Of a DNA stretch of 64,000 bases, positions 52,239 to 63,483 are shown piece by piece (the stretch's first letter is position 1; each line of letters begins with the position of its first letter). The position numbers were made by a program, and so were the translations under genes. A model generated the notes under the pieces. The model was not told the DNA's origin and made no database searches. It saw only the letters and a program-made list of their open reading frames with translations. The stretch is taken from positions 62,001 through 126,000 of IMG/VR virus record IMGVR_UViG_3300046513_000221; one strand, given 5' to 3'.

Positions 52239-53926
52239 GATATCTCTTCTGGTGAAAATAGACTTGCCCACTCGTCCTCAACACCGGTGATCCCCTTGAG
52301 GGGTTCGGTCTCTTGGAGAGGGAAAGAGTCTGGTGCTGTGCCGTTGAGAGGCCAGCCCCCGGTGAGCGCGGAGGCGTCCATCTCACGGTCGATGTCGTGC
52401 ATGCTCTCGAACAGTACAACGTTGTTTTGCACGTTGTTCTCGTTGAGGCGGTTGACGTAGTCCACGCTACTCCGGCACTCACCGGAGAAGTCGTTGATCT
52501 TGGAGAAATCGGTCTGCACTTCGGAGAGATTACCGAGGAGAGAATTGGATACGCGGTACGTCTCCAGATTCGTGCCAAGATTCTGCGTCAGGATGTTGGA
52601 TTCATCGAAGCCGTAGGTCGAGACCACCTGCGAAGCCAGACCATTAGGAAGGCTACTGGTACTGGATGGGAAGGAGAAAGTCTGACCGGGAAGCTGCTTA
52701 GTCGAATCGATGTATTGAGTGCTGCGATCGTAATACTTGGTCGAAGTATCGACCTTAGCGTCCCGAGCACGGTACATATCGCCGGAGCAGCAGTAGCAAG
52801 CCGTCCTGTCCGAGAAGGAACCCTGATTCAGACCGTACTGCTGGTATGCCATCTGTTGATTAGCCGCCGAGAGGCCGGAGACCCCCATAGCCGTGCTGAT
52901 GAACGGGTCGTAGTTGCCGAACCTGTTGAGGGACTGGGCTGCGATACAGGCACTAACTGATTTGTTGCCAAACGATCCCTGCAAGGAGTTGCCCAGCGCC
53001 GTACCGAGGATACTCGATACACCGTTCTTTGTCATGAACCGACCCACCTCCGGAGAGATACCCGCTAGGGCGCTCTTCATCTGAGGTGGGATCTTGTCGG
53101 TTATACCGTTCACCGTGCTCTGGATCCCGGCGACGCCTTTAGCCGCGTACGATACAGCACCGTTAACGACACTCATAGTGCCGTTGATGGCTCCCATGAC
53201 ACCGGACACCGGTGACTTGAAGTCGAACGATGTACCGCTCGTCTGCGCCAGCTTGGTCAGACCCATAGAGAGCAGACCGAGGACCGTGTCTTCCTTGCAC
53301 TCCATCATCTTGGCGACATTGGAGATCGGATCCTTGATGGTAGGGATGTTGGTGTTAGAGCGAGCGCCGGGTGCGAACCCAGACAACGCATTGCCAGCTG
53401 CCTTGGCGATCTTCACCAGAGAGTTACCGATGCCCTTGATGCAGTCCTTGATGAAGTCTCCGTCCACCTTGGACAGACCGATCTTAAGGTCATCGAAGGC
53501 CATATCGATCTTATCCAAAAGATGACCAATGTTGAGGGACGCCACCTTGTCGGTGAGCTTACCAAGGAAATCGAGACACTCCGCACCCGCCTGTGCGATC
53601 AGGAGACCGGTCTGGATGCCAGTATCCACGATCCCCATCACGGCCTGGACACCAACTCGGGAGTTCAAGAGATTCCTATCGGCAGAGCCGAGAATGGAGC
53701 CCATGTTGCCGAAGTTGATGTTACCGCAGGGGAGGTTGTTGGAGACATACTGCTGTTTTGTGTAGCCACTGTATGGCCGAACGTTGGACTCAGTCGGCAG
53801 CAACTTGCTGAACGGCCTGATGAGTGAGTCCTTGATATCTACTGCTATCATGCTGTGCTCCTTGCACGTCGCATGCAATGAAGTCCAATCCGATATGGAA
53901 TGAACTCCATGAGGCATGACTTTCAT
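52235..53926 (-). CDS. Hypothetical virion (tail/baseplate) protein
   Basis: 563 aa, G/S-rich, divergent from the tape-measure gene, late motif at 53934-53945. Confidence 0.7.
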   Translation of the reverse strand: MKVMPHGVHSISDWTSLHATCKEHSMIAVDIKDSLIRPFSKLLPTESNVRPYSGYTKQQYVSNNLPCGNINFGNMGSILGSADRNLLNSRVGVQAVMGIVDTGIQTGLLIAQAGAECLDFLGKLTDKVASLNIGHLLDKIDMAFDDLKIGLSKVDGDFIKDCIKGIGNSLVKIAKAAGNALSGFAPGARSNTNIPTIKDPISNVAKMMECKEDTVLGLLSMGLTKLAQTSGTSFDFKSPVSGVMGAINGTMSVVNGAVSYAAKGVAGIQSTVNGITDKIPPQMKSALAGISPEVGRFMTKNGVSSILGTALGNSLQGSFGNKSVSACIAAQSLNRFGNYDPFISTAMGVSGLSAANQQMAYQQYGLNQGSFSDRTACYCCSGDMYRARDAKVDTSTKYYDRSTQYIDSTKQLPGQTFSFPSSTSSLPNGLASQVVSTYGFDESNILTQNLGTNLETYRVSNSLLGNLSEVQTDFSKINDFSGECRSSVDYVNRLNENNVQNNVVLFESMHDIDREMDASALTGGWPLNGTAPDSFPLQETEPLKGITGVEDEWASLFSPEEIS

Positions 53927-53933
53927 TGTCGAT

Positions 53934-53970
53934 TATTAAGGTGTTTCCTATGATGCGCAACACATTAGTA
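53934..53970. promoter_or_regulatory. Back-to-back late-type promoters (- 53934-53945; + 53959-53970)
   Basis: AACACCTTAATA and AACACATTAGTA. Confidence 0.7.
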
Positions 53971-54009
53971 ATCGAAATCAAGCAACTTTCTAGCATAGGG
54001 GCTACTAAC

Positions 54010-57000
54010 ATGGCCGGTTTATTCAAGAACATAATGAAGTCCCTGACGACTAAGGTAATCCCTGACATCGCCAAGAACGCATTCCCCACGGTTCAGCAGC
54101 TGAACGAGGAAAGGCGTCAGAACTTTAGAGAAGCTGAAGGTGTAATGGATGAGCTCGGCGTGAAGATGAACTCCTTCAAGGAGAACTTCGCCGGTCTCGG
54201 TACAATCCACAGGAATCTAGCTAAACAGCTGGGTTCCGGCAGCTTCGGCACCTCTCAGGAGGACGCCGACAACGCGATGATGAAGTCGATGTTCGGCATC
54301 GACTTCGACGAACCTATCGGCGGCGCGGATGATTCCGCCGACGGTGCGAAGGGTTCCAAGAAGGTCATCATCAACAATATCAACTCCTCGAAGATGCCTT
54401 CAGGTATCACCGAGGACGGTCTGGGTACCATCCAGTCCATCGCCAAGCAGACGAACGTCAACGCACGCGGTCTGGCCTCCAACGCCAAGATCCTCTCCTC
54501 CATCAACTACAATCTGGGTCTGATGAACGCCTTCCACATCGAGAAGACGTCAGCTTACTACGATCTGTCGCTGGAGTCGATGAAAGGCCTCATGGCCGGT
54601 CAGAAGGAGATGATGGACCAGAATAGGGCCATGGCGGATCACTATAAAGAGATGCAGGAGAACGCACGCCTTGATGCAATGAACCGCCAGCTCGACGTGA
54701 AGCAGGTGCTGAACCCGGCCAACTTCATGAAGCGCATCGCCGAGAACCCGCTCTTCAGCGATCTCGTGATGGGTGCCGCTGGCTCCAAGGTCAAGCAAGC
54801 CATTCAGGATCCTCTCGGTATGGCGGCTTCGCTCGCCGGTACGGCCATCATGCAGAAGTTCGCAGGTGGTCTGATCAACAGCGTGGAGCAGTTCGCCAAA
54901 GACTTGCCTTACATGGCACAGAATAAGTTCGAGAAGTGGTCCGGCTCCCGTGACTTCTCCAAGAGCGGCTTCAGTCTGACGAACGTCCTCGCCACGATCG
55001 GCGACAACCTGAAGCTGAACACCGCCGATGCGCGTGTCCGCATGAATCAGGACAAGGACGGCCCGGTAGCATGGGATGCCAAGGCACGCCGCGCACTGGT
55101 GACGGAGATCCCCGGATACCTCGCCAAGATGCTGCGTGAGCTGGAGGCGACCAACCACTTGATGGCCGACGCGTGGGGAACCAAGCGTCGCAACGTCGAG
55201 CATCAGGTCTACGACGGCATGACCGGATCCTTCACCTACGAGGGTGAGATCAAGAAGCGTCTGAACAAGAACATCAAGGACATCGATCAGGGCCAGCACT
55301 TCGGTGGTCTGGGCAGTCAGGTCGATACTGTTGCTCGCATGGGTAACATGTCCAAGTCCGAGGCCGCTAAGGTCAAGGCGATCATGATGAACATCGGCAA
55401 CTCCAACATGGCTGGCGAGGTCAACCTCCGCTCCAAGGAGAATGTCAAGGCCAACATGGCGAACTACGTCAAACAGACGTACAAGCGCAAAGAAGGTCAG
55501 ACCGACGAGAACTACAACAAGGCCATCGAACGCCGCATCGCAGCTCTGACGACTGGTAAGTCCGGTAAGTCGATTGACAAGTTCATCGGCACACTGCAGT
55601 CCTCCGGCACTGGCGGTAACGCCATTCGTCAGCAGACCCTCGACCGTCTGCTGGGCGAGCTGAACGGCACGTCCGACGCTTCCAAGAAGCAAGAGCTGCA
55701 AGAGGAGTACACCCGTCAAAAGGACATGTTTGACGAGGCAAAGAAGCGCGGTCGTAATGAGCTGGAGAAGACCGAATCGGCATTGAAACGCCATTCGCTC
55801 GACCGCTTCACCGCAGCAGAGCGCTTCGGCAACTCGCAGCGTGACTCCGCGTCCTCCAGTGTCTTCGCTATCAACAACATGTCCGGTCAGATGTCCAAGC
55901 GTCAGATGATCGCGCAGCGTACCAAGATGCCGGATGCCAGCGCCCTCGACAAGCTCGATGCATGGGCAGAGCGTCTGAAGGAACCCTTCGACAAGCTCAA
56001 TGCCTTCTTCAGCAAGTGGTACGGCAAGTTCGAAGTCAAGATGAATCAGGCTATGGACTGGGTCGGAGACAAGGTCAAGAAGGCTTGGGGCTGGATGAGC
56101 GACAAGGCCACCAAGGGCTACAACAAGGCCAAGGACGGCTTGAAGAACCTGAACGAGATGTTCCAGGCCAACATCGTCCTGCCTCTGAAGAAGCGCCTGA
56201 TGGGCGGTGATGAAGACAAGGCCAAGAAGCTCTCCTTCATGAAGGTCATGGAGATCAACTGGAACAAGAACGTCCTCCTGCCGTTCAAGCGCATGCTGCT
56301 CGGCGACGACAAGGATGCCGCCAAGAAGCTGTCGCTCTGGCAGACGATCAAGTTCAGCGCCAACAAGGCCATGCAGCCCGTCAAGGACTGGTTCAACAAA
56401 CAATTCGTGCCTTCGATGAAGGACATGTACAAGGAAGTCTCCGGCGAGGTCAAGAAGTACGCCCTCCAGTTCAAGGACTGGATCGTTAAGGATGTCTTCG
56501 GAGGCGGTAAAGCCTTCTTCAAGGGCATCTTCGGCGACGAAAACATCGCCAAGCTCCGCAAGAATCTGGTCGATCCATTCAAGAATGCCGTGAACAAACT
56601 GACCGACTCGCTCGGCGGTATGCTCAAGTTCTTCGCCCGTATCCCGGTCAACTTCTTCCGTGGTGTCGCAGACACTATCAAGATGAAGCGCTGGAAAAAG
56701 GGTGAGGGTAACTTCTCCGAAGAAGAGATCGAACGCTTCAAGGGTCACGAGGAGCGCGGCTCCGCTTTCGATTGGAAGAACAAAGGCAATCCAGCCAAGA
56801 AGGCTCAGGACGCTACCGCTGGTGTGCGCTCCGAGGCTACTGAAATGGGTGCCAACATCAACGAGGGTCTCGCAGACGGCATGCAGCAGACTCAGGATCA
56901 GGTTCAAGAGCAAGTGGACGAGGTAGCTCACACCAGCATCCTGGACCGTATCAAGAAGGCTCTGGGTATCCATTCTCCTTCCCGCGAGATGATTGCCATC

Positions 57001-60000
57001 GGCGGTCACATCATGGACGGTCTGCGGATCGGCATGGAGAACGGTCGTGACGACCTGCGCAACACCATGCGCGGTATCCACGAGGATATCATCGACGTGG
57101 ATGCACGTGAGGTGTTCCCTATGGCCGGTGGCGGTGATCGCAAGGCCAACGCTGGTGGTTCTGGCAACCGCGCCTCCGGTACTGGTCCTTCCAACATCCT
57201 CGAATCGATCAAGCGCTCGGTGGAAGCCATCGAGAAGACGACCGACAACAACCTGCCAATCATCGCCGACAACACCAAGACCATCATCGACATCCTCAAC
57301 GGTCTCGATCATAGTGGCGGAAATGGCGGCAAGAAGGGTGGTCTCTTCGGTAAGATCAAGGGCTTCTTCACCAACATTATGACCGCACCGATGAAGGTGC
57401 TGAAGGATACCTTTAACAGCCTGAAAGACCTCCCCGGCAAACTGCTCACAGGCATTTCCGGGTTCGCCAAGGACTTCTTCGGCAAGGCCGGTAAGGTAAT
57501 CACCGGACTGGTCGAGACCGTCACTCCGATGATCGGCAACCTCATGGAGGGTGCCGCGAACGTACTGAAGAGTACAACCGAGATGCTGATGACCGGCGCT
57601 AAACGCGTCTTCGATCAGATCGGTCCTATGGCTGAGAAGCTGGGCAAGATGGTTCAGGACGTAGCGACCAAGGCGTTGGAAACGGCGACCAGTCTCGCCA
57701 AGTCGATTGGCAAGGCTCTCAAGCCGATGACCGATGCGGCCATCCAGATCGGTAAGGATCTCCTGACCGGTATGCGTCCTGCGATCTCCGCGCTGACGGC
57801 AACCCTGTCGAACGCGATCGTCGGCCTTGCCAAGTTCGGTAAGAGCCTCTTCGATTTGACCATGAACATCGCCAACAAGCTGCTCGCTAAGGGTGCTGGT
57901 CTGGCCGACAAGCTCATGGGTGGCATCGGCGGTCTCTCGATCGGAGGCTTCGGCAATGGCGGTAGCGCTACCGTGGCGGTGAGTAACTTCTCCGACATGC
58001 GCGGTCACCGTCGCTCGAACCCGCTGTTCGTACATGTGGTCGATGGTCGCGTCCAGACCTACTCCGGCAAGGGCAAGGCCCGTGTTGGCAAGATCGACAA
58101 CGACGAGGGAAGCTTCGGCCTGAAGGGTCTGCTCGGCGGTAAGAAAGACAAGAAGGATGGCGAGGGCGACAGCGATTCGCTGATGGGTGCCGCAGGTGGA
58201 GCACTGGCCGGTACCGCTGGTGCCGCGCTGCTGGGTCGTGGTAAGGCTCTTGTAGGTAAGGGCATGTCCAAGATCGGTGGCTTCCTCGGCTTCAAAGGCA
58301 AGGCTCCTGCTGTTCCAGCAGGTGCCGCTGCCGGTGCTGAGAGCGCGACCGTCAAGGCCGCTGCTGGCACTGCGACCAAGGTTCCGACCGCAGCCGGTGA
58401 AATGGCTGAGACCGCAGCCAAGGGCGAAGCAAGCGCTGCCGCTAAAACCGCATCCAAAGTTCCTACATCCGGCGCTGCCGCTGGTGCTGAGAGCGCGACC
58501 GTCAAGGCCGCGTCCGGCGCAGCAGGTGCTGCTGAGAACGTCGCTGCTGGTGCGGCGAAGTCCGGTGGAGTCATGTCCAAGATCGGTAGTGCTGGCAAAG
58601 GCCTTATGAAGGGCGGAGTCGGTAAGCTGGTCAAGGGCGTGGGTGCTGGTGCTATCGTCAGCATGGGCGGTTCCGCTCTGACCAACCTCTTCACCGAGGA
58701 AGGTTCGAAGACTAACAAACTCCTGAACGCCGTCTTCGGAACGGTGGGTGACGCGGCAACTGGCGCGGCGATCGGTAGCTTCATCCCGGTCATCGGTAAC
58801 GTCGTTGGTGCCGTGGGCGGTGCGCTGTACGGTGCCGCTACCAAACTCATCCCTGCAATCGAGGATGCTTTCAGCGAAGAGATTCAGAGCATGACGACCT
58901 CCTTCTTGGAGTTCCCGGACAAGCTGACCGCATGGATCGATGCACTGCCAGCCAAGGTTGACAAGTTCGCCGAGGACATCCCTAAGAAGCTGCTCTCGTT
59001 GTTCGAGGCTCCTGATGCTGGTGACCTCGATCCGGTGACTGGTCTGCCGAAGGAAGAAAAACCATCTATCCTTTGGAAAATGACCAAGGCGCTGGGTAAT
59101 GCCGGTGTCGCCCTGATCGCAGCCATGCCTAAGCTGGGTATCACTCTTGCCGAGTCCTTCGGTAAGATCCTCGGTTCCGCCTTGATGGGTGCCGTTGGTA
59201 TGCTCGGTAAGGGCGTGACGAGTGTGGTGTTCGGCGTGTCGAACTACTTCGAGGACATGGTCGCAGGTGTCAAGAACTGGGCTGCGTCCACGAAGATCGG
59301 TAGCATGCTGGGCCTGAAGGGTGAGTCCAAGGACGAGGAGAACAATCGCAAGGTTTCTCGTGCCGCGTCTCAGAACGCATACATGGCGAACTACGATGCC
59401 ACTGTTTCGGACCTGTCCTCCAAGGCGGGTAAGCTCGGTGGTCAGATCGGCGGTGCCGTTGGTGCTGTCGCTATGGCCCCGGTGACGGGTGCTGCAGTGC
59501 TCGCTAAGGGTGCTCAAGCCCTGACCGATGATGGTGGTGCGGAGAAGAACCGTAACCGCTACGACGAGGCCATGAAGGCATCCGGTGGTGATGAGAAGAA
59601 GGCTAAGGAGTATGCCAAGACCAAGTTCGGTGGCGACGTTGAGTCCTACTGGAACAAGGGCAAGGATGCTTCTGGTCAAGCCAACAAGGCCGTTAGCGAC
59701 GCTCGCTACCAGAAGTGGCTGATCGCCAACAACGAGAAGTCTGGCCCTGAGTCGCGTGCTCGTTTCGACGCTATGGTCGCATCCGAAGCCGGTGGTAAGG
59801 CCAAGGGTAACTTCGGTAGCAAGGAAGTCAGCGACGCGATCGCTCAGGCCTCCGCTGCGTACGGTCTCGACGTAAGTCTGATGACCAAGATGGCTCTGGT
59901 GGAATCCGGTATGGATCCGAAGGCGACCTCACCAACGGGTGCTAAGGGTCTCTTCCAGTTCGTCACCGGCACCGGTAAGGAGATGGGTCTGAACAGCGAG

Positions 60001-60927
60001 GACCAGTTCTTCAATCCGTACACCAATGCTATGGCAGGTGCGCGGTACCTGAAGATGAACGGTAATCAGCTGGCCGCGAAGAACGTCCCTGTCAATCCAC
60101 TGACCCTGTATCTGGCTCACCAGCTGGGTGCTGGCGGTGTGACTGAGGTATGGAATGCTGCCGCCAACGGCAAGCTCCTGTCCGACGATCGCATCAAGGC
60201 AATGACCCTCAACAATCCGGGTCTGACCAAGGAGCAACTGTCCAATCCGAAGCTGTACATCTCAGCGTGGGACAAGAAGCTCCAGACCGGCATCAATCCG
60301 TTCGGCGATCTGTCGAGCGCGATGAGTGCCGTGAAGGTTGATTCCCGCGTGGCCGCAATCGGCGCGGCTGGTATCACTCCGACCTCGTCCAGCACCCCGG
60401 CAACAGCTACCGCAGATTCCAAGGTTCCTGCGGTGGCCGCGTCTAGCCCTATGGTAGCAGCAGCGACCGCAACCCCTTCAGTATCGGGTGGTAACGCGAT
60501 CAATGGTGCTTCCCCTTCGGTTATGGCAGCTGGTGGTAGTGCGCAGGTAGCTGCCAATGAGACTGTTGCTCAGAACCGTAACACCGGTTCCGTGATGGCC
60601 GCTGCGGTATCGACCGGCGTATCGACCGACAAGGATCCGATCCTGTCCGAGATGCAGAAGCAGACCGGCATCCTCGCATCCATCGCTGGCAACACCGGTG
60701 AGATGAAGATCGCGGCCCTGAGCGCTGTGCAGAACAACATCGCTGAATCCTCTTCCGACAAGGCCGAGGACAAGATGGTTGCTGCAAAGGCTCAGATCGC
60801 GGGTAAGAGGGCTGAACGTCTCGCCACCGATCTCTTCGGTAACATGAATCAGAACAGCGGTTCCAGTGCAGTGCCTTCGGGTAACGCGCTGCGTATCGCC
60901 TCTGGCATGAGTGGTCGCTTCGCGTGA
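54010..60927 (+). CDS. Tail tape-measure protein with a C-terminal lytic transglycosylase (SLT) domain
   Basis: ~2305 aa, helical A/G/K-rich; ALVESGMDPKATSPTGAKGLFQF..YLAHQLGAGG; start MAGLFK downstream of the late promoter. Confidence 0.88.
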   Translation: MAGLFKNIMKSLTTKVIPDIAKNAFPTVQQLNEERRQNFREAEGVMDELGVKMNSFKENFAGLGTIHRNLAKQLGSGSFGTSQEDADNAMMKSMFGIDFDEPIGGADDSADGAKGSKKVIINNINSSKMPSGITEDGLGTIQSIAKQTNVNARGLASNAKILSSINYNLGLMNAFHIEKTSAYYDLSLESMKGLMAGQKEMMDQNRAMADHYKEMQENARLDAMNRQLDVKQVLNPANFMKRIAENPLFSDLVMGAAGSKVKQAIQDPLGMAASLAGTAIMQKFAGGLINSVEQFAKDLPYMAQNKFEKWSGSRDFSKSGFSLTNVLATIGDNLKLNTADARVRMNQDKDGPVAWDAKARRALVTEIPGYLAKMLRELEATNHLMADAWGTKRRNVEHQVYDGMTGSFTYEGEIKKRLNKNIKDIDQGQHFGGLGSQVDTVARMGNMSKSEAAKVKAIMMNIGNSNMAGEVNLRSKENVKANMANYVKQTYKRKEGQTDENYNKAIERRIAALTTGKSGKSIDKFIGTLQSSGTGGNAIRQQTLDRLLGELNGTSDASKKQELQEEYTRQKDMFDEAKKRGRNELEKTESALKRHSLDRFTAAERFGNSQRDSASSSVFAINNMSGQMSKRQMIAQRTKMPDASALDKLDAWAERLKEPFDKLNAFFSKWYGKFEVKMNQAMDWVGDKVKKAWGWMSDKATKGYNKAKDGLKNLNEMFQANIVLPLKKRLMGGDEDKAKKLSFMKVMEINWNKNVLLPFKRMLLGDDKDAAKKLSLWQTIKFSANKAMQPVKDWFNKQFVPSMKDMYKEVSGEVKKYALQFKDWIVKDVFGGGKAFFKGIFGDENIAKLRKNLVDPFKNAVNKLTDSLGGMLKFFARIPVNFFRGVADTIKMKRWKKGEGNFSEEEIERFKGHEERGSAFDWKNKGNPAKKAQDATAGVRSEATEMGANINEGLADGMQQTQDQVQEQVDEVAHTSILDRIKKALGIHSPSREMIAIGGHIMDGLRIGMENGRDDLRNTMRGIHEDIIDVDAREVFPMAGGGDRKANAGGSGNRASGTGPSNILESIKRSVEAIEKTTDNNLPIIADNTKTIIDILNGLDHSGGNGGKKGGLFGKIKGFFTNIMTAPMKVLKDTFNSLKDLPGKLLTGISGFAKDFFGKAGKVITGLVETVTPMIGNLMEGAANVLKSTTEMLMTGAKRVFDQIGPMAEKLGKMVQDVATKALETATSLAKSIGKALKPMTDAAIQIGKDLLTGMRPAISALTATLSNAIVGLAKFGKSLFDLTMNIANKLLAKGAGLADKLMGGIGGLSIGGFGNGGSATVAVSNFSDMRGHRRSNPLFVHVVDGRVQTYSGKGKARVGKIDNDEGSFGLKGLLGGKKDKKDGEGDSDSLMGAAGGALAGTAGAALLGRGKALVGKGMSKIGGFLGFKGKAPAVPAGAAAGAESATVKAAAGTATKVPTAAGEMAETAAKGEASAAAKTASKVPTSGAAAGAESATVKAASGAAGAAENVAAGAAKSGGVMSKIGSAGKGLMKGGVGKLVKGVGAGAIVSMGGSALTNLFTEEGSKTNKLLNAVFGTVGDAATGAAIGSFIPVIGNVVGAVGGALYGAATKLIPAIEDAFSEEIQSMTTSFLEFPDKLTAWIDALPAKVDKFAEDIPKKLLSLFEAPDAGDLDPVTGLPKEEKPSILWKMTKALGNAGVALIAAMPKLGITLAESFGKILGSALMGAVGMLGKGVTSVVFGVSNYFEDMVAGVKNWAASTKIGSMLGLKGESKDEENNRKVSRAASQNAYMANYDATVSDLSSKAGKLGGQIGGAVGAVAMAPVTGAAVLAKGAQALTDDGGAEKNRNRYDEAMKASGGDEKKAKEYAKTKFGGDVESYWNKGKDASGQANKAVSDARYQKWLIANNEKSGPESRARFDAMVASEAGGKAKGNFGSKEVSDAIAQASAAYGLDVSLMTKMALVESGMDPKATSPTGAKGLFQFVTGTGKEMGLNSEDQFFNPYTNAMAGARYLKMNGNQLAAKNVPVNPLTLYLAHQLGAGGVTEVWNAAANGKLLSDDRIKAMTLNNPGLTKEQLSNPKLYISAWDKKLQTGINPFGDLSSAMSAVKVDSRVAAIGAAGITPTSSSTPATATADSKVPAVAASSPMVAAATATPSVSGGNAINGASPSVMAAGGSAQVAANETVAQNRNTGSVMAAAVSTGVSTDKDPILSEMQKQTGILASIAGNTGEMKIAALSAVQNNIAESSSDKAEDKMVAAKAQIAGKRAERLATDLFGNMNQNSGSSAVPSGNALRIASGMSGRFA

Positions 60928-61009: not shown

Positions 61010-62365
61010 ATGGCTGCTGACCTGAACATGTCCAATCCGTCCGAGAACCCCTACGCTAAGTTCTACGAGCCTAGCTTCGGGACCATCATCGGACGTCCGA
61101 TGGCATTCAACGCAAAATGCGACCCAAACCAGCGCGTGTATCAAGACACGATGCTAAAGAACAACACGATCGTCCGGATCACTCCGGGCATCTACAACTA
61201 CAATCAGGCAAGCCTGAAGCGAGCTGATGAGATCCTGGAAGAACATAGTAAAGAGATGCAGGAACTCAAGGCCAAGGGTCTGGAACCCGGATCCTACGAG
61301 CGGAAGGTCAACGAGATCAACCAGAAGTATCAGGATAAGCTGATCAAGGAGAAGGTGGACATGCGCTACCTGACCTTCAAGCCGGACTTCCCGCACTTCC
61401 TGCGCGCCCTGCAGCTGCTGATCAACCGCACCTCCACCTCGCTCTTCAACCGGAAGCTCAACAGCGCCACCGGCTCGAAGTCGTCCTTCCTGACCGACAT
61501 CCTCGCGTCGCTGGACATCGAGCAGAACGCGGCCTACCGTGGCTTCAACATGTGGGTGGAGAAGTCCACCTCGATCTCCGAGTCCATCAACAACAGCTAT
61601 ACCAGCTCGGTGTTCGAGGGTCTCCAGAACAAGGTCTCTCGTTTCACCCGCGAGCTTCAGGCGGTCGGTATGTCGGTAGGCAACGCCACCAACGCCGACC
61701 AGCAGAAGGACGTGAAGGTTGATGGCGACTTCCAGAATCAGGCGTCCGTCCTCGGTCAGCTGGTGCAGAAAGCATCGTCTGCGATGGCAGGTTCCAAGAT
61801 CATCATCCCTCAGATCTGGGACGACTCGAAGTTCACCCGTACGTACAACATCGCCTTCCGCTTCAGCTCACCGTACGGCGACGACCGCTCGTGCTACGTG
61901 AACGTCATCCTCCCGTTCCTGTTCCTGTTGTGCTGCGCACTGCCGCGTCAGGACGGTCCTTCCGGTATGATGAACCCGTTCCTGCTTCAGATGGACTGCC
62001 CCGGCTACTTCAGCACCCCAATGGGATGCGTGACCGACATGTCGTTCGTCAAGGGCGGCAACGAGCAGCTGTGGAACTACTCCGGTCTACCTATGGTGAT
62101 CGAGGGTACGATGGCCGTGTCCGACCTGTACAACGCGCTGTCGCTCCCGCTGGAGAACCAGCAGCTGCTGAGTAACTACGGCACTGCGGCATTCCTCAAC
62201 AACCTCGTTGGTGCGTCCCTGTACTCGACGGAAGACCCTAGCGTCCTCGACCAACTGGCCAACTCCATCAAGGGTGGTCTGATGAGCGTGGCCGATCCTC
62301 TGAATCAGGCCGACGCCAAGATCCTCTCGATCATGCGTTGGGCTGGTCTGACCAAGCAGAACTAA
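61010..62365 (+). CDS. Virion structural protein (baseplate/tube-initiator-like)
   Basis: PQIWDDSKFTRTYNIAFRFSSPYGD..ALPRQ..NPFL..GCVTDMSFVKG tube-like pattern; follows the tape-measure gene. Confidence 0.65.
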   Translation: MAADLNMSNPSENPYAKFYEPSFGTIIGRPMAFNAKCDPNQRVYQDTMLKNNTIVRITPGIYNYNQASLKRADEILEEHSKEMQELKAKGLEPGSYERKVNEINQKYQDKLIKEKVDMRYLTFKPDFPHFLRALQLLINRTSTSLFNRKLNSATGSKSSFLTDILASLDIEQNAAYRGFNMWVEKSTSISESINNSYTSSVFEGLQNKVSRFTRELQAVGMSVGNATNADQQKDVKVDGDFQNQASVLGQLVQKASSAMAGSKIIIPQIWDDSKFTRTYNIAFRFSSPYGDDRSCYVNVILPFLFLLCCALPRQDGPSGMMNPFLLQMDCPGYFSTPMGCVTDMSFVKGGNEQLWNYSGLPMVIEGTMAVSDLYNALSLPLENQQLLSNYGTAAFLNNLVGASLYSTEDPSVLDQLANSIKGGLMSVADPLNQADAKILSIMRWAGLTKQN

Positions 62366-62374
62366 GGAGGAAAC

Positions 62375-62563
62375 ATGCGTAAAACGATTGGAATGGTCGT
62401 GAGCATCATCGTTCTCGGTATCACACTGAACGGTTGCTCCAGCGAACCGAAAAAGAGTACCATGCGTGTCGAACGCGGTGAGGTGACCTCGGCACCCTAC
62501 GGCTACACCGACTACTGTCGGAACCACCCCGAGTACAAGGAGTGCGGCAATGCAGCTAAGTGA
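62375..62563 (+). CDS. Lipoprotein carrying the BTLCP N-terminal P.G...C..HP...C motif
   Basis: Signal peptide plus lipobox LNG-C; AAGGAGG RBS. Confidence 0.75.
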   Translation: MRKTIGMVVSIIVLGITLNGCSSEPKKSTMRVERGEVTSAPYGYTDYCRNHPEYKECGNAAK

Positions 62564-62924
62564 ACTTGACTCCATCAACCGGCGCGTGAACGAGTCGGTT
62601 ACCTACAAGACCGACATCGAGGAGTACAACCAGCTGGAGTTCTGGAACGTGGCCGGTACGGTCGGTGACTGCGAGGACTACTGCCTCCTGAAGATCCACC
62701 GTCTTCTGGCGGCTGGACTCCCGATCTCGGCGATGTCGCTGGTGGTCTGCGCCTATGAGGACGAAGGTCACTGCGTCCTCTTCGTCGAGCTGGACGGCGA
62801 GACCTACGTGCTCGACAACAACAGCGACCAGCTGCTCTTCCCGGAGGACACCCCGTACGAGTGGATCAAGGTCCAGACCCCCGGTACGCCGGAGTGGCGC
62901 GAGATGAAGCTGGTCAAGCGCTAA
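62550..62924 (+). CDS. Transglutaminase-like cysteine protease (BTLCP/LapG family), catalytic domain
   Basis: INRRVN..Y.TD..EFW..GDCEDYCLLK..GHCVL..YVLDN (Cys-His-Asp); own AAGGAG RBS. Confidence 0.88.
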   Translation: MQLSELDSINRRVNESVTYKTDIEEYNQLEFWNVAGTVGDCEDYCLLKIHRLLAAGLPISAMSLVVCAYEDEGHCVLFVELDGETYVLDNNSDQLLFPEDTPYEWIKVQTPGTPEWREMKLVKR

Positions 62925-62930
62925 ACACGG

Positions 62931-62969
62931 AAACCCCATAGACCTTAACGGGCCTATGGGGTTTATTTT
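62931..62969. terminator. Bidirectional terminator
   Basis: AAACCCCATAG..CTATGGGGTTT. Confidence 0.8.
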
Positions 62970-63411
62970 ATTTCTTCAGGAAAGTACTCGGTCGATAGTC
63001 ATACTCGAACACCGAGCTATATCGCTCTTGCATGGTCATGGGTTCCAGCATTACCGTACGGCACTTCACCGCAACCACCTTGTCGCTGTGGTTGTGCTGA
63101 AACGCGTAAAATACTAGGCCGATGATTCTTGTTACTTCTTGTAGGGCGTCTAGGAGTGGTGGAACCTTGACGTTCACGTAGAAGACTTCTTGCTTGGTCC
63201 CGGTGACGGTTGTGTCGTATGCGAAATCCTCTTCTCGCTCCCGAGAGAAGACACGGATCTCGACATCCGGTCGTACCTCCATCGATGCATTGAAAAGGTC
63301 AAACATCTCTCTGTAGATAGGCGCGGTGCCATCCGACTCGACGTCTATATCGACACGGATCTTGTAGAAATCGCCGTACTTTGTCAGCACAGGTTTCTTG
63401 TCGGTACTCAT
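62968..63411 (-). CDS. Hypothetical protein
   Basis: Probable start MSTDKK at ATG 63411. Confidence 0.65.
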   Translation of the reverse strand: MSTDKKPVLTKYGDFYKIRVDIDVESDGTAPIYREMFDLFNASMEVRPDVEIRVFSREREEDFAYDTTVTGTKQEVFYVNVKVPPLLDALQEVTRIIGLVFYAFQHNHSDKVVAVKCRTVMLEPMTMQERYSSVFEYDYRPSTFLKK

Positions 63412-63483
63412 GTGGTTTCTTCTTTCATAAACCGTTCTTCTGCGGAACGGTGCTTTCGTTGCTCGGACAAGCATCGATTGTAC

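What the first reader, a model, noticed from the sequence alone, without database searches (positions are those of the whole stretch)
62375..62924. LapG/BTLCP protease split into a lipoprotein and a signal-less catalytic subunit
Established: many bacterial BTLCPs are single periplasmic proteins with a signal peptide, a P.G...FC...P..C segment and then the N..VN..GDCED..H..D core; LapG cleaves T1SS adhesins such as LapA. Seen: the signal (a lipobox, LNG-C, with Ser at +2 suggesting outer-membrane sorting) and APYGYTDYCRNHPEYKEC lie in a 62-aa ORF. The intact Cys-His-Asp core is a second ORF overlapping by 14 nt with its own AAGGAG RBS, which argues against a sequencing frameshift. The catalytic part has no export signal. 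Inference: a two-part protease that assembles only when the inner membrane is breached (holin-timed), acting in lysis, adhesin/biofilm release or receptor removal. It follows virion genes, so it is probably expressed late.
Basis: partly seen in the sequence, partly recalled or inferred. Interest (0 to 1): 0.75.

Follow-up and report, generated by a model that had tools for sequence, protein, structure and literature searches.

The report
Phage protease split into lipopeptide plus core
A jumbo phage makes a LapG/HvyA-type envelope protease as two separate proteins, a small exported lipid-anchored peptide and a catalytic core with no export signal. The same two-gene design recurs in at least 70 other viral loci and in none of 80 bacterial ones, so it is a conserved phage invention and not a broken gene.

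Summary
ORF1 (62375-62563, 62 aa) has a signal peptide, a lipobox Cys21 and a PYGYTDYC-x8-C motif. ORF2 (62550-62924, 124 aa) is an intact Cys-His-Asp BTLCP core. The two overlap by 14 nt, and each has its own Shine-Dalgarno site.

The frame break is not an assembly error. Four other contigs and the Logan contigs of three runs show no indel there.

The design is widespread. Of 84 viral loci:
- 19 have lipopeptide then core.
- 50 of the 50 assessable remaining short cores have the same kind of lipopeptide gene just downstream.
- 6 are ordinary fused, signal-bearing proteins.
- The best 80 bacterial loci, all Alphaproteobacteria, include no split form; 73 are fused.

Cultured Xanthomonas jumbo phages carry the pair, unannotated.

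Other results:
- A profile comparison ties the lipopeptide to the ordered N-terminal segment of fused BTLCPs (95.5%).
- The core folds alone (pLDDT 91.5, LapG-like).
- Docking of the two parts scored 0.40 against 0.01 for the best control, which is weak support.

The idea that the parts meet only after the inner membrane is breached is coherent but untested. The substrate is unknown. ORF1 is not the phage's spanin. Programmed frameshifting and pseudogenisation are rejected.

Novelty: a new variant of a known family. Interest: 0.74.

The parts
61010..62365 (+). Upstream gene of the same transcription unit: a 451-aa virion structural protein, homologue of Yersinia phage phiR1-37 g085.
   Evidence: phrog_20401, E=3e-102. 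tblastn gives 44% identity to phiR1-37 g085. The gap to ORF1 is 9 nt, and no promoter-like site was found.
62364..62370 (+). Shine-Dalgarno site AAGGAGG of ORF1.
   Evidence: Read from the sequence.
62375..62563 (+). ORF1, a 62-aa pre-lipopeptide. It has a signal peptide (residues 1-20), lipobox Cys21, a linker, and a BTLCP N-terminal motif (residues 30-57, 62462-62545) with two Cys eight residues apart.
   Evidence: HHalign of the lipopeptide family against fused BTLCPs gives 95.5% probability, E=1.5e-8. Codon-usage log-odds are positive. dN/dS of orthologues is 0.11-0.63.
62435..62437 (+). Codon of Cys21, the predicted lipidated first residue of the mature 42-aa peptide.
   Evidence: This Cys is invariant in alignment A3. 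None of 64 distinct lipopeptides has Asp at +2.
62537..62542 (+). Shine-Dalgarno site AAGGAG of ORF2, formed by the Lys-Glu codons of the ORF1 motif, 7 nt before the ATG.
   Evidence: In relatives the Pro-Gly-Asp/Glu codons of the motif give GGAG(A/G) in the same place.
62550..62563 (+). The 14-nt overlap of ORF1 and ORF2 (ORF2 in the +1 frame).
   Evidence: It is identical in five assemblies.
62550..62924 (+). ORF2, a 124-aa signal-less BTLCP catalytic core. C41 is at 62670-72, H74 at 62769-71 and D89 at 62814-16. The Ca-site residues D40 and E42 flank the nucleophile.
   Evidence: PF06035 at 107 bits. AF2 pLDDT 91.5. The best Foldseek match is LapG 4u65_E, TM 0.80. The triad and the D-C-E motif are invariant in split, fused and permuted forms.
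62931..62973 (+). Intrinsic terminator: a hairpin at 62931-62964 followed by a U-rich tract. It is shared with the convergent gene 62968-63474(-).
   Evidence: Folding gives -20.5 kcal/mol, z=-4.8, with 0 of 200 shuffles as stable.

Best explanation
The locus encodes a phage-specific two-gene form of a BTLCP, the LapG/HvyA family of calcium-dependent periplasmic cysteine proteases.

ORF1 is exported by Sec, lipidated at Cys21 and trimmed to a roughly 42-residue lipopeptide. Its C-terminal half is the conserved N-terminal segment of single-chain BTLCPs (M-x-x-x-G ... P-x-G-W/Y-x-x-Y-C-x8-C), and its two Cys probably form a disulfide.

ORF2 is translated from its own start inside the end of ORF1, so the two are translationally coupled. 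It gives an autonomously folding catalytic core with no export signal, which accumulates in the cytoplasm. There the low free Ca2+ should keep it idle.

The two products lie on opposite sides of the inner membrane. They can therefore meet only when that membrane is breached late in infection, by a holin or at the burst itself. The pre-placed lipopeptide then binds the core as the missing segment does in fused relatives. This tethers the core to the envelope membrane and perhaps completes it, and it cuts an envelope protein that is not yet known.

Shown: the architecture, its conservation, the homology of each part, and the intact active site.

Inferred: lipidation, binding in trans, the compartment gate, and the calcium dependence of this particular copy.

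Unknown: the substrate.
For: 1. The break is real and under selection. It is the same in 5 assemblies. dN/dS of the lipopeptide is 0.11-0.63, against 0.15-0.33 for the core.
2. The two-gene design is conserved in viruses. 19 loci have lipopeptide then core, with junction overlaps of 1, 4, 7, 10, 13, 14 or 16 nt in two different frames. Four more came from sampled short proteins. 50 of 50 assessable short cores have the lipopeptide gene downstream.
3. The bacterial contrast is sharp: of the best 80 loci, none is split and 73 are fused.
4. The lipopeptides are uniform. The mature length is 30-46 aa (median 37) for 64 distinct peptides, not counting two longer-linker variants, L068 and L074. 61 of 64 have exactly three Cys, mostly spaced C-x8-C, and none has Asp at +2.
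5. The lipopeptide profile matches the N-terminal segment of fused BTLCPs (HHalign 95.5%, E=1.5e-8). In a fused relative that segment is modelled at pLDDT 96-97, so it is an ordered part of the fold.
6. Complex prediction gives weak support: ipSAE 0.40 against 0.01 for the best of 3 controls. That mark was reached by 58 of 80 solved complexes and 2 of 110 mismatched pairs. At a score of 0.60 or below, only 7 of those 80 solved complexes passed, as did both mismatches. My own alignments were used, so these counts hold only roughly.
7. The core folds alone (pLDDT 91.5) and is LapG-like.
8. D-C-E is invariant. In DvhG the D316A/E318A change abolishes Ca-dependent activity (PMC13090378), and Ca2+ ions near the active site are functionally important in LapG (PMC4359373).
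9. Core and lipopeptide identities co-vary (Mantel r=0.37, 0 of 999 permutations as high). This shows co-inheritance only.
Against: - No experiment or transcript or proteome data bear on localisation, binding or timing.
- The complex score is only a weak pass.
- The core is predicted to fold without the peptide, so the peptide may be an anchor and not a needed part.
- A test of whether predicted interface residues are better conserved in forms with an upstream or fused motif was not significant (p=0.15). Its comparison group was later found to carry the partner too, so the test is uninformative.
- The pair does not sit beside the phage's lysis genes. The spanin-like pair is about 107 kb away and the SLT candidate endolysin about 30 kb away.
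- That endolysin has a signal or SAR-like N-terminus. If it works with a pinholin, the core could leave only when the cell bursts.
- Two lipopeptide variants lack the Cys pair, so a disulfide is not essential.
Confidence: 0.5

Rival explanations
1. The core works alone in the cytoplasm, for example on a host or defence protein. The lipopeptide has a separate periplasmic job, such as competing with or titrating a host BTLCP partner. The two genes travel together only because of shared ancestry and overlapping coding sequence.
For: The core is predicted to fold autonomously and has no signal. The gene order can flip, which shows the genes are independent translation units.
Against: The lipopeptide accompanies 69 of 69 assessable short cores in this sample (19 upstream, 50 downstream), across roughly 40% identity and two gene orders. 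That is hard to explain without a joint function. Its conserved part is homologous to the segment that packs on the core in fused proteins. The Ca-site residues are conserved, and family members studied need calcium (PMC13090378).
Confidence: 0.15
2. The lipopeptide is a guard, not a partner. It binds and neutralises any core that leaks into the periplasm early, or protects something from the protease, in the manner of an immunity or pro-segment.
For: The predicted interface includes residues next to the catalytic Cys and His (E42, C75) and one face of the catalytic helix. Pro-segments that inhibit are common in papain-like proteases (general knowledge).
Against: In bacterial single-chain BTLCPs the same segment is a permanent, ordered part of enzymes that are presumably active. 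No cleavage site or removal is known.
Confidence: 0.1
3. The core is a virion-carried or ejected enzyme used at entry into the next host. It would be co-expressed with virion genes, and the lipopeptide would serve assembly or some other role.
For: The pair is co-transcribed with a virion structural gene and lies next to a giant SLT-bearing virion protein. In other viruses the pair often follows tail-fibre or tail-spike genes. BTLCP domains also occur embedded in 600-950-aa viral proteins.
Against: No virion proteome is available. A periplasmic lipopeptide has no obvious part in packaging a cytoplasmic protein. The end of the tail module is also a usual site for lysis genes and moron genes (accessory gene insertions).
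Confidence: 0.08
4. One fused protein is made by programmed ribosomal frameshifting across the overlap, or the gene is a recently broken pseudogene.
For: The two ORFs together cover a whole BTLCP.
Against: - ORF2 has its own strong Shine-Dalgarno site and ATG.
- Junctions differ in overlap length and frame among relatives.
- Only 3 of 19 junctions hold any X-XXY-YYZ heptamer, the kind of slippery site -1 frameshifting needs.
- In 50 loci the lipopeptide gene lies after the core, where no frameshift could restore the bacterial domain order.
- Both genes are under purifying selection.
Confidence: 0.02
5. ORF1 is simply the phage's o-spanin, and its likeness to BTLCP is fortuitous.
For: It is a small lipoprotein with Cys residues, made late.
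Against: The overlapping partner has no transmembrane segment. The genome has a separate pair at G000:231958-232813, made of a protein with an N-terminal transmembrane segment followed by a lipoprotein. The lipoprotein hits an Rz-like spanin family at E=5.5e-6 and the other member at E=0.009. Homology to the BTLCP N-terminal segment is significant at profile level.
Confidence: 0.02

Closest known systems
Single-chain alphaproteobacterial BTLCPs, including HvyA of Caulobacter (PMC4241560), and the fused phage copies (Rhizobium phage vB_RleS_L338C gene L338C_150)
   Same: They share the domain, the Cys-His-Asp triad, the D-C-E motif and the N-terminal P-x-G-x-x-x-F/Y-C-x-x-x-P-x-x-C segment. ORF2 is 40-46% identical to their cores.
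   Different: In those proteins the signal, the motif and the core are one polypeptide joined by a linker of about 17 aa. Here the linker is gone, the motif is a separate lipopeptide, and the core has no signal. HvyA blocks capsulation. No function is known for the phage pair.
LapG (P. fluorescens and L. pneumophila; PDB 4U65, 4FGO)
   Same: It is the best structural match (TM 0.80 and 0.77). It is a calcium-dependent periplasmic cysteine protease with calcium bound beside the nucleophile (PMC4359373).
   Different: Identity is only 21-22%. LapG is a soluble, signal-bearing single chain controlled by LapD and c-di-GMP, and it cuts LapA-type adhesins. None of those partners was sought or seen here.
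DvhG of Desulfovibrio vulgaris (PMC13090378)
   Same: It is a BTLCP held on a membrane by an N-terminal anchor and a long flexible linker. Mutation of the D-C-E calcium site inactivates it.
   Different: The anchor is a transmembrane helix on the same chain, not a separate lipopeptide, and the enzyme is exported in the ordinary way.
Canonical holin-dependent endolysins
   Same: They are small, signal-less phage enzymes whose targets lie outside the inner membrane, so access is gated by membrane permeabilisation (established lysis paradigm).
   Different: Endolysins are single proteins that cut peptidoglycan. Here a second, pre-exported piece waits on the other side, and the enzyme family is not known to cut murein.
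Vasohibin-SVBP (PMC4866520, PMC6642083)
   Same: A transglutaminase-like cysteine protease of the same superfamily works as a heterodimer with a small partner protein.
   Different: SVBP is not derived from the protease and is not a lipoprotein. The system is eukaryotic and cytoplasmic. This is an analogy only.
Two-component spanins (Rz/Rz1)
   Same: They also pair a small late lipoprotein gene with an overlapping gene.
   Different: The spanin partner is an inner-membrane protein with a transmembrane segment, and the usual order is i-spanin first. ORF2 is soluble and enzymatic, and the phage has its own spanin-like pair.

Membership tests
BTLCP / Peptidase_C93 (PF06035) | Domain match above the curated cut-off | tested here: met
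   ORF2 scores 107.3 bits against a cut-off of 27, E=9e-31, over profile positions 39-156 of 162.
BTLCP / Peptidase_C93 (PF06035) | Cys-His-Asp catalytic triad | tested here: met
   C41, H74 and D89 are invariant across split, fused and permuted forms.
BTLCP / Peptidase_C93 (PF06035) | Calcium-site residues flanking the nucleophile (D-C-E) | tested here: met
   D40 and E42 are present and invariant. Their role is taken from DvhG mutants (PMC13090378). Calcium dependence of this protein was not measured.
BTLCP / Peptidase_C93 (PF06035) | Transglutaminase-like (LapG) fold | tested here: met
   AF2 pLDDT 91.5. The top six Foldseek hits are all LapG chains, TM 0.71-0.80.
BTLCP / Peptidase_C93 (PF06035) | N-terminal signal peptide on the catalytic polypeptide (periplasmic export) | tested here: not met
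   ORF2 starts at the first helix of the domain with no hydrophobic segment. The signal is on ORF1.
BTLCP / Peptidase_C93 (PF06035) | Conserved N-terminal P-x-G...C...C segment in the same chain | tested here: not met
   The segment is present but on the separate ORF1. Pfam alone gives only E=0.056 (E=0.023 for the mature peptide). The profile-profile comparison gives 95.5%, E=1.5e-8.
LapG subfamily (Lap system) | LapD-type receptor, and a LapA-type adhesin with a di-alanine site as substrate | not tested
   The host is unknown and no search was made. The nearest relatives are alphaproteobacterial non-LapG BTLCPs. Identity to LapG is 21-22%.
Bacterial lipoprotein (ORF1) | Signal peptide ending in a lipobox with an invariant Cys | tested here: met
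   The window has L-N-G-C, with an atypical Asn at -2. Relatives have canonical lipoboxes, and the Cys is invariant. Lipidation itself cannot be tested here.
Two-component spanin | Lipoprotein paired with an overlapping or adjacent inner-membrane protein that has an N-terminal transmembrane segment | tested here: not met
   ORF2 has no hydrophobic segment. A separate spanin-like pair exists at G000:231958-232813.
Programmed ribosomal frameshift gene | Conserved slippery site at the junction, and no independent start for the downstream frame | tested here: not met
   No slippery heptamer was found in the window, and only 3 of 19 relatives have one. Shine-Dalgarno sites and start codons are present. 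The frames differ among relatives, and the gene order is reversed in 50 loci.
Endolysin | Membership of a peptidoglycan-hydrolase family | tested here: inconclusive
   ORF2 has no match to a murein-hydrolase family. The fold is papain-like and distantly resembles such peptidases. The genome has a 194-aa SLT protein as the likelier endolysin, and no homologue of the phiR1-37 M15 endolysin g084.

The most novel reading that the evidence does not exclude
Phages have turned a bacterial periplasmic protease into a compartment-split enzyme that acts as a logical AND gate. A lipid-anchored docking peptide is placed in the envelope in advance. The catalytic core is stored in the cytoplasm, where low calcium should keep it idle. 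Activity then appears only at the instant the inner membrane fails. This would be a previously unrecognised class of late-acting phage envelope factor, acting for instance by cutting outer-membrane tethers, capsule or adhesin machinery, or receptors on debris. It would be widespread in uncultured viruses, where the gene is at present counted as an 'auxiliary metabolic gene'.
Probability: 0.3. Interest if true: 0.85.

Novelty: new variant of a known kind. Interest (0 to 1): 0.74.

Why it matters
BTLCP was reported as the most frequently identified 'auxiliary metabolic gene' in river viruses (PMC11283719). No paper in the searched library mentions that most viral copies lack a signal peptide and come with a separate lipopeptide gene.

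- The result changes what these genes can be. A signal-less core cannot remodel the envelope of a living host the way HvyA or LapG do.
- It gives a natural case of gene fission that sorts the two halves of one enzyme into different compartments, kept even when the gene order is swapped.
- It points to a late, envelope-directed function in phage release that can be tested in cultured Xanthomonas jumbo phages.
- It gives annotators a rule: look for a gene for a roughly 35-45-aa mature lipopeptide overlapping either end of a short BTLCP gene.
- The pair could serve as a natural split-protein reporter of inner-membrane breach.

Tried and rejected
- **DNA search against GenBank phages:** no match.
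- **Single-protein locus search in viral contigs:** nothing.
- **Word-indexed protein search:** found only the phage's own cluster. The exhaustive HMMER search was what opened the family.
- **My first classing of about 50 short cores as 'solo' was wrong**. A wider scan found their lipopeptide gene downstream. The group labels and change counts of the tree should therefore not be used. Its deep branches are weakly supported in any case.
- **Interface-conservation test:** not significant (p=0.15). Its comparison group later turned out to have the partner as well, so the test is uninformative.
- **PHROG searches of the large proteins with embedded BTLCP domains:** no further domains.
- **Neighbour-family tally:** no single conserved neighbour. 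Tail-fibre or tail-spike and virion genes lie upstream in several loci, a PG hydrolase upstream in three, and a hol-like protein downstream in one.
- **The idea that the pair replaces the M15 endolysin of phiR1-37:** g084 has no homologue in this genome, but a signal-bearing SLT protein is the likelier endolysin. The idea is not favoured. Phage_lysozyme and Amidase_2 were absent. The Glyco_hydro_19 search also found nothing, but none of its control genomes matched either, so it shows nothing.
- **tblastn of one permuted-class core against cultured phages:** nothing.
- **The LapG structure paper PMC3416269:** not held, so the calcium-site residues are cited from PMC13090378 instead.
- **Read laying:** returned assembler contigs, not raw reads, so rare variants cannot be excluded.
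Full report
**1. The observation**

The window is bases 62001-126000 of a 263,413-bp viral record with direct terminal repeats. It comes from rhizosphere metagenomes. The phage is related to the jumbo Yersinia phage phiR1-37: the gene just upstream of the finding is 44% identical to virion protein g085.

At the stated coordinates there are two overlapping ORFs on the + strand.

ORF1 (62375-62563, 62 aa):
- It follows AAGGAGG.
- It encodes a signal peptide and a lipobox L-N-G-C, with Cys21.
- After a short linker comes M-R-V-x-x-G ... P-Y-G-Y-x-x-Y-C-x8-C.

ORF2 (62550-62924, 124 aa):
- It starts 7 nt after AAGGAG, in the +1 frame, and overlaps ORF1 by 14 nt.
- It matches Pfam Peptidase_C93 (BTLCP) at E=9e-31 over profile positions 39-156.
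- ORF1 on its own matches positions 2-24 only weakly (E=0.056).

Both frames have the phage's codon usage, and 14-nt overlaps occur at three other gene pairs in my rough gene call. A hairpin of -20.5 kcal/mol (z=-4.8) with a U tract follows ORF2. ORF1 begins 9 nt after the virion gene, so the pair closes a late, virion-gene transcription unit.

**2. Not an artefact**

The same 124-aa protein is called on four other contigs, from two JGI metagenomes and two SRA runs. Their DNA aligns without any indel. There are five SNPs, four of them synonymous. Logan contigs of three runs laid on the region show substitutions only. These are assemblies and not raw reads, so rare variants are not excluded.

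**3. What the relatives show**

An exhaustive HMMER search with ORF2 found 4,899 homologues.
- Many of the best hits are 119-140 aa and begin, like ORF2, at the first helix.
- Others are 190-250 aa, with signal, motif and core in one chain.

The gene contexts of two short relatives showed an upstream small ORF in another frame. Each encodes a signal, a lipobox and P-x-G-x-x-x-F/Y-C-x-x-x-P-x-x-x-C and ends a few residues after the second Cys. The overlaps with the core are 16 nt and 4 nt.

A profile-guided scan of IMG/VR gave 80 more loci. Adding the window and three assembly loci makes 84, which break down as follows.

| Architecture | Loci |
|---|---|
| Lipopeptide gene upstream of the core (junction overlaps 1, 4, 7, 10, 13, 14 or 16 nt; mostly -1 frame, the window +1) | 19 |
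| Lipopeptide gene just downstream of the core, usually overlapping its 3' end by about 20-55 nt | 50 of 50 assessable |
| Short core on a contig that ends too soon to judge | 2 |
| Ordinary fused protein with a signal | 6 |
| BTLCP domain inside a 600-950-aa protein | 6 |
| BTLCP domain at the N-terminus of a 539-aa protein | 1 |

I had first called the 52 cores without an upstream partner 'solo'. That was wrong. Two of the 50 have another gene between core and lipopeptide. A few carry variant motifs, including two without the Cys pair.

Four of four further short proteins sampled from other sources were also split, with the lipopeptide upstream.

The lipopeptides are strikingly uniform:
- The mature length is 30-46 aa (median 37) for 64 distinct peptides. 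This leaves out two variants with a much longer linker (L068 and L074).
- 61 of 64 have exactly three Cys, mostly spaced C-x8-C.
- None has Asp at +2.

The bacterial contrast is sharp. The 80 bacterial loci most similar to the short-form profile are all from Alphaproteobacteria. None is split, 73 are fused, and 7 have long N-terminal regions.

Cultured Xanthomonas and Erwinia jumbo phages carry the upstream-lipopeptide form. In PhiXhv-15 it is a 47-aa lipoprotein followed by a 140-aa core with a 1-nt overlap. Both are annotated as hypothetical, and the paper describing those phages does not mention them.

**4. Are the two parts really two halves of one enzyme?**

- A profile of the lipopeptides aligns to residues 35-62 of a fused BTLCP profile with 95.5% probability (E=1.5e-8).
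- In the AlphaFold model of that fused protein the segment has pLDDT 96-97, so it is an ordered part of the fold. The signal peptide, by contrast, is disordered.
- The fission point is the linker of about 17 residues between the second Cys and the first core helix. In some Caulobacterales and Hyphomonadaceae proteins that linker is 100-170 residues long.
- ORF2 alone is modelled with pLDDT 91.5, and its best structural matches are LapG chains, TM 0.71-0.80.
- Docking the core with the mature lipopeptide gave ipSAE 0.40 (three runs: 0.43, 0.40, 0.38) against 0.01 for the best of three controls. The tool grades this as weak support. The mark was reached by 58 of 80 solved complexes and 2 of 110 mismatched pairs. 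At 0.60 or under, only 7 of those 80 solved complexes passed, as did both mismatches. My own alignments were used, so the counts hold only roughly. Because the two chains are homologous to contiguous parts of one protein, the prior for binding is fairly high.
- In one clade of five loci, dN/dS of the lipopeptide is 0.11-0.63, close to the 0.15-0.33 of the core.
- Pairwise identities of cores and lipopeptides co-vary (Mantel r=0.37, 0 of 999 permutations as high). This shows co-inheritance and nothing more.

**5. Explanations excluded**

- *Sequencing error:* excluded by section 2.
- *Pseudogene:* excluded by conservation and purifying selection.
- *Programmed frameshift:* ORF2 has its own Shine-Dalgarno site and ATG, and the junction frames differ among relatives. 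Only 3 of 19 junctions hold any slippery heptamer. In 50 loci the lipopeptide gene lies after the core.
- *o-spanin:* ORF2 has no transmembrane segment. The genome has a separate pair at G000:231958-232813, made of a protein with an N-terminal transmembrane segment and then a lipoprotein, with Rz-like spanin hits at E=0.009 and 5.5e-6.

**6. How it most likely works**

Shown: an exported, probably lipidated peptide and a signal-less core are made from coupled genes, and the active site is intact.

From the literature:
- BTLCPs that have been studied act in the periplasm. LapG cuts adhesins and HvyA blocks capsulation (PMC4359373, PMC4241560).
- They depend on calcium bound at the D-C-E residues around the nucleophile (PMC13090378).
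- Those residues are invariant in this family.

Inference:
- The core waits in the cytoplasm, where free calcium is low.
- It meets its pre-placed lipopeptide only when the inner membrane is breached.
- It is then held on the envelope membrane, where it cuts an unknown envelope protein.

This is the holin-endolysin logic with an added second piece.

Caveats:
- The core may not need the peptide for activity.
- The pair is not next to the phage's lysis genes.
- The likely endolysin, a 194-aa SLT protein at G000:155079-155663, has a signal or SAR-like N-terminus. If the holin is a pinholin, the core would leave only at the burst.

I put about 0.9 on the two-protein architecture being functional. 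I put about 0.5 on the whole compartment-gated model.

**7. Context and novelty**

phiR1-37 lacks the pair. At the corresponding operon it has an M15 endolysin (g084) before g085. The window phage has no g084 homologue and instead carries the pair after the g085 homologue. The pair therefore looks like an accessory cassette, which agrees with the reported horizontal exchange of viral BTLCP genes (PMC11283719).

Among the 27 held papers that name BTLCP, LapG-like or the Pfam family, none that I read, and no listed title or abstract, describes a split or lipopeptide-partnered form.

The enzyme family is known. The two-gene, two-compartment architecture, and its near-universality among viral short forms, appears to be new.

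Noticed in passing
window 53926-60927 (+): A giant 2333-aa ORF with Ala/Gly-rich low-complexity stretches and a C-terminal SLT lytic-transglycosylase domain (E=3.7e-17). It sits at the same position as phiR1-37 g083, annotated 'tape measure tail fibre protein'. The 1709-aa antisense ORF at 54550-59679 looks like a shadow ORF, not a gene.
   Followed up: partly
G000:C1:231958-232813 (outside the window; L171:2959-3814): A putative separate two-component spanin. A 160-aa protein with an N-terminal transmembrane segment is followed by a 120-aa lipoprotein, with Rz-like spanin PHROG hits at E=0.009 and 5.5e-6.
   Followed up: partly
G000:C1:155079-155663 (-) (L181:1444-2028): A 194-aa SLT-domain protein with an N-terminal hydrophobic signal or SAR-like segment. 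It is the likeliest endolysin of this phage. No Phage_lysozyme or Amidase_2 match, and no homologue of the phiR1-37 M15 endolysin, was found in the genome. A Glyco_hydro_19 search also found nothing, but its controls did not match either.
   Followed up: partly
L077, L079, L083, L087, L089, L090 (viral contigs): A BTLCP core with an in-frame G-W/F-x-x-F-(C/A)-x-x-N-P motif is embedded in 600-950-aa viral proteins. Several of these begin M-G-x-A-R-I-V-S-G-G-P. No other PHROG domain was detected, and their function is unknown.
   Followed up: partly
L062:2827-2997, L082:2857-3042: Lipopeptide variants that keep P-x-G-W-x-D-Y but lack both motif cysteines and end in R-G-G. The disulfide is therefore not universal in the family.
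   Followed up: no
L094, L105, L166 (Maricaulis, Phenylobacterium and Hyphomonadaceae genomes): Bacterial single-chain BTLCPs with a lipobox, the motif, and then a 100-170-aa linker before the core. They suggest the motif module and the core are structurally separable, and that lipidated forms already exist in bacteria.
   Followed up: no
window 62968-63474 (-): A 168-aa ORF with no Pfam or PHROG match. It converges on ORF2 and shares the hairpin terminator at 62931-62964.
   Followed up: no
L178 (Xanthomonas phage PhiXhv-15, PV764602.1 180852-181417): A cultured jumbo phage carries the lipopeptide-plus-core pair (XYR93260.1 and XYR93261.1), with both genes annotated as hypothetical. PhiXhv-12, PhiXhv-16, Ep026 and Ep032 give the same tblastn hit. 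This offers a tractable system for experiments.
   Followed up: partly
P0008 (418 aa, from the representative search): A protein with two complete tandem BTLCP units, each with its own Cys motif.
   Followed up: no
L014, L016, L054 (viral contigs): In these loci the core and its downstream lipopeptide directly follow a peptidoglycan-hydrolase-like gene (phrog_1259, baseplate hub/tail lysozyme, E=4e-34). In L024 a 'hol-like' protein lies downstream. These are hints of a link to lysis or the cell wall, seen in only a few loci.
   Followed up: partly
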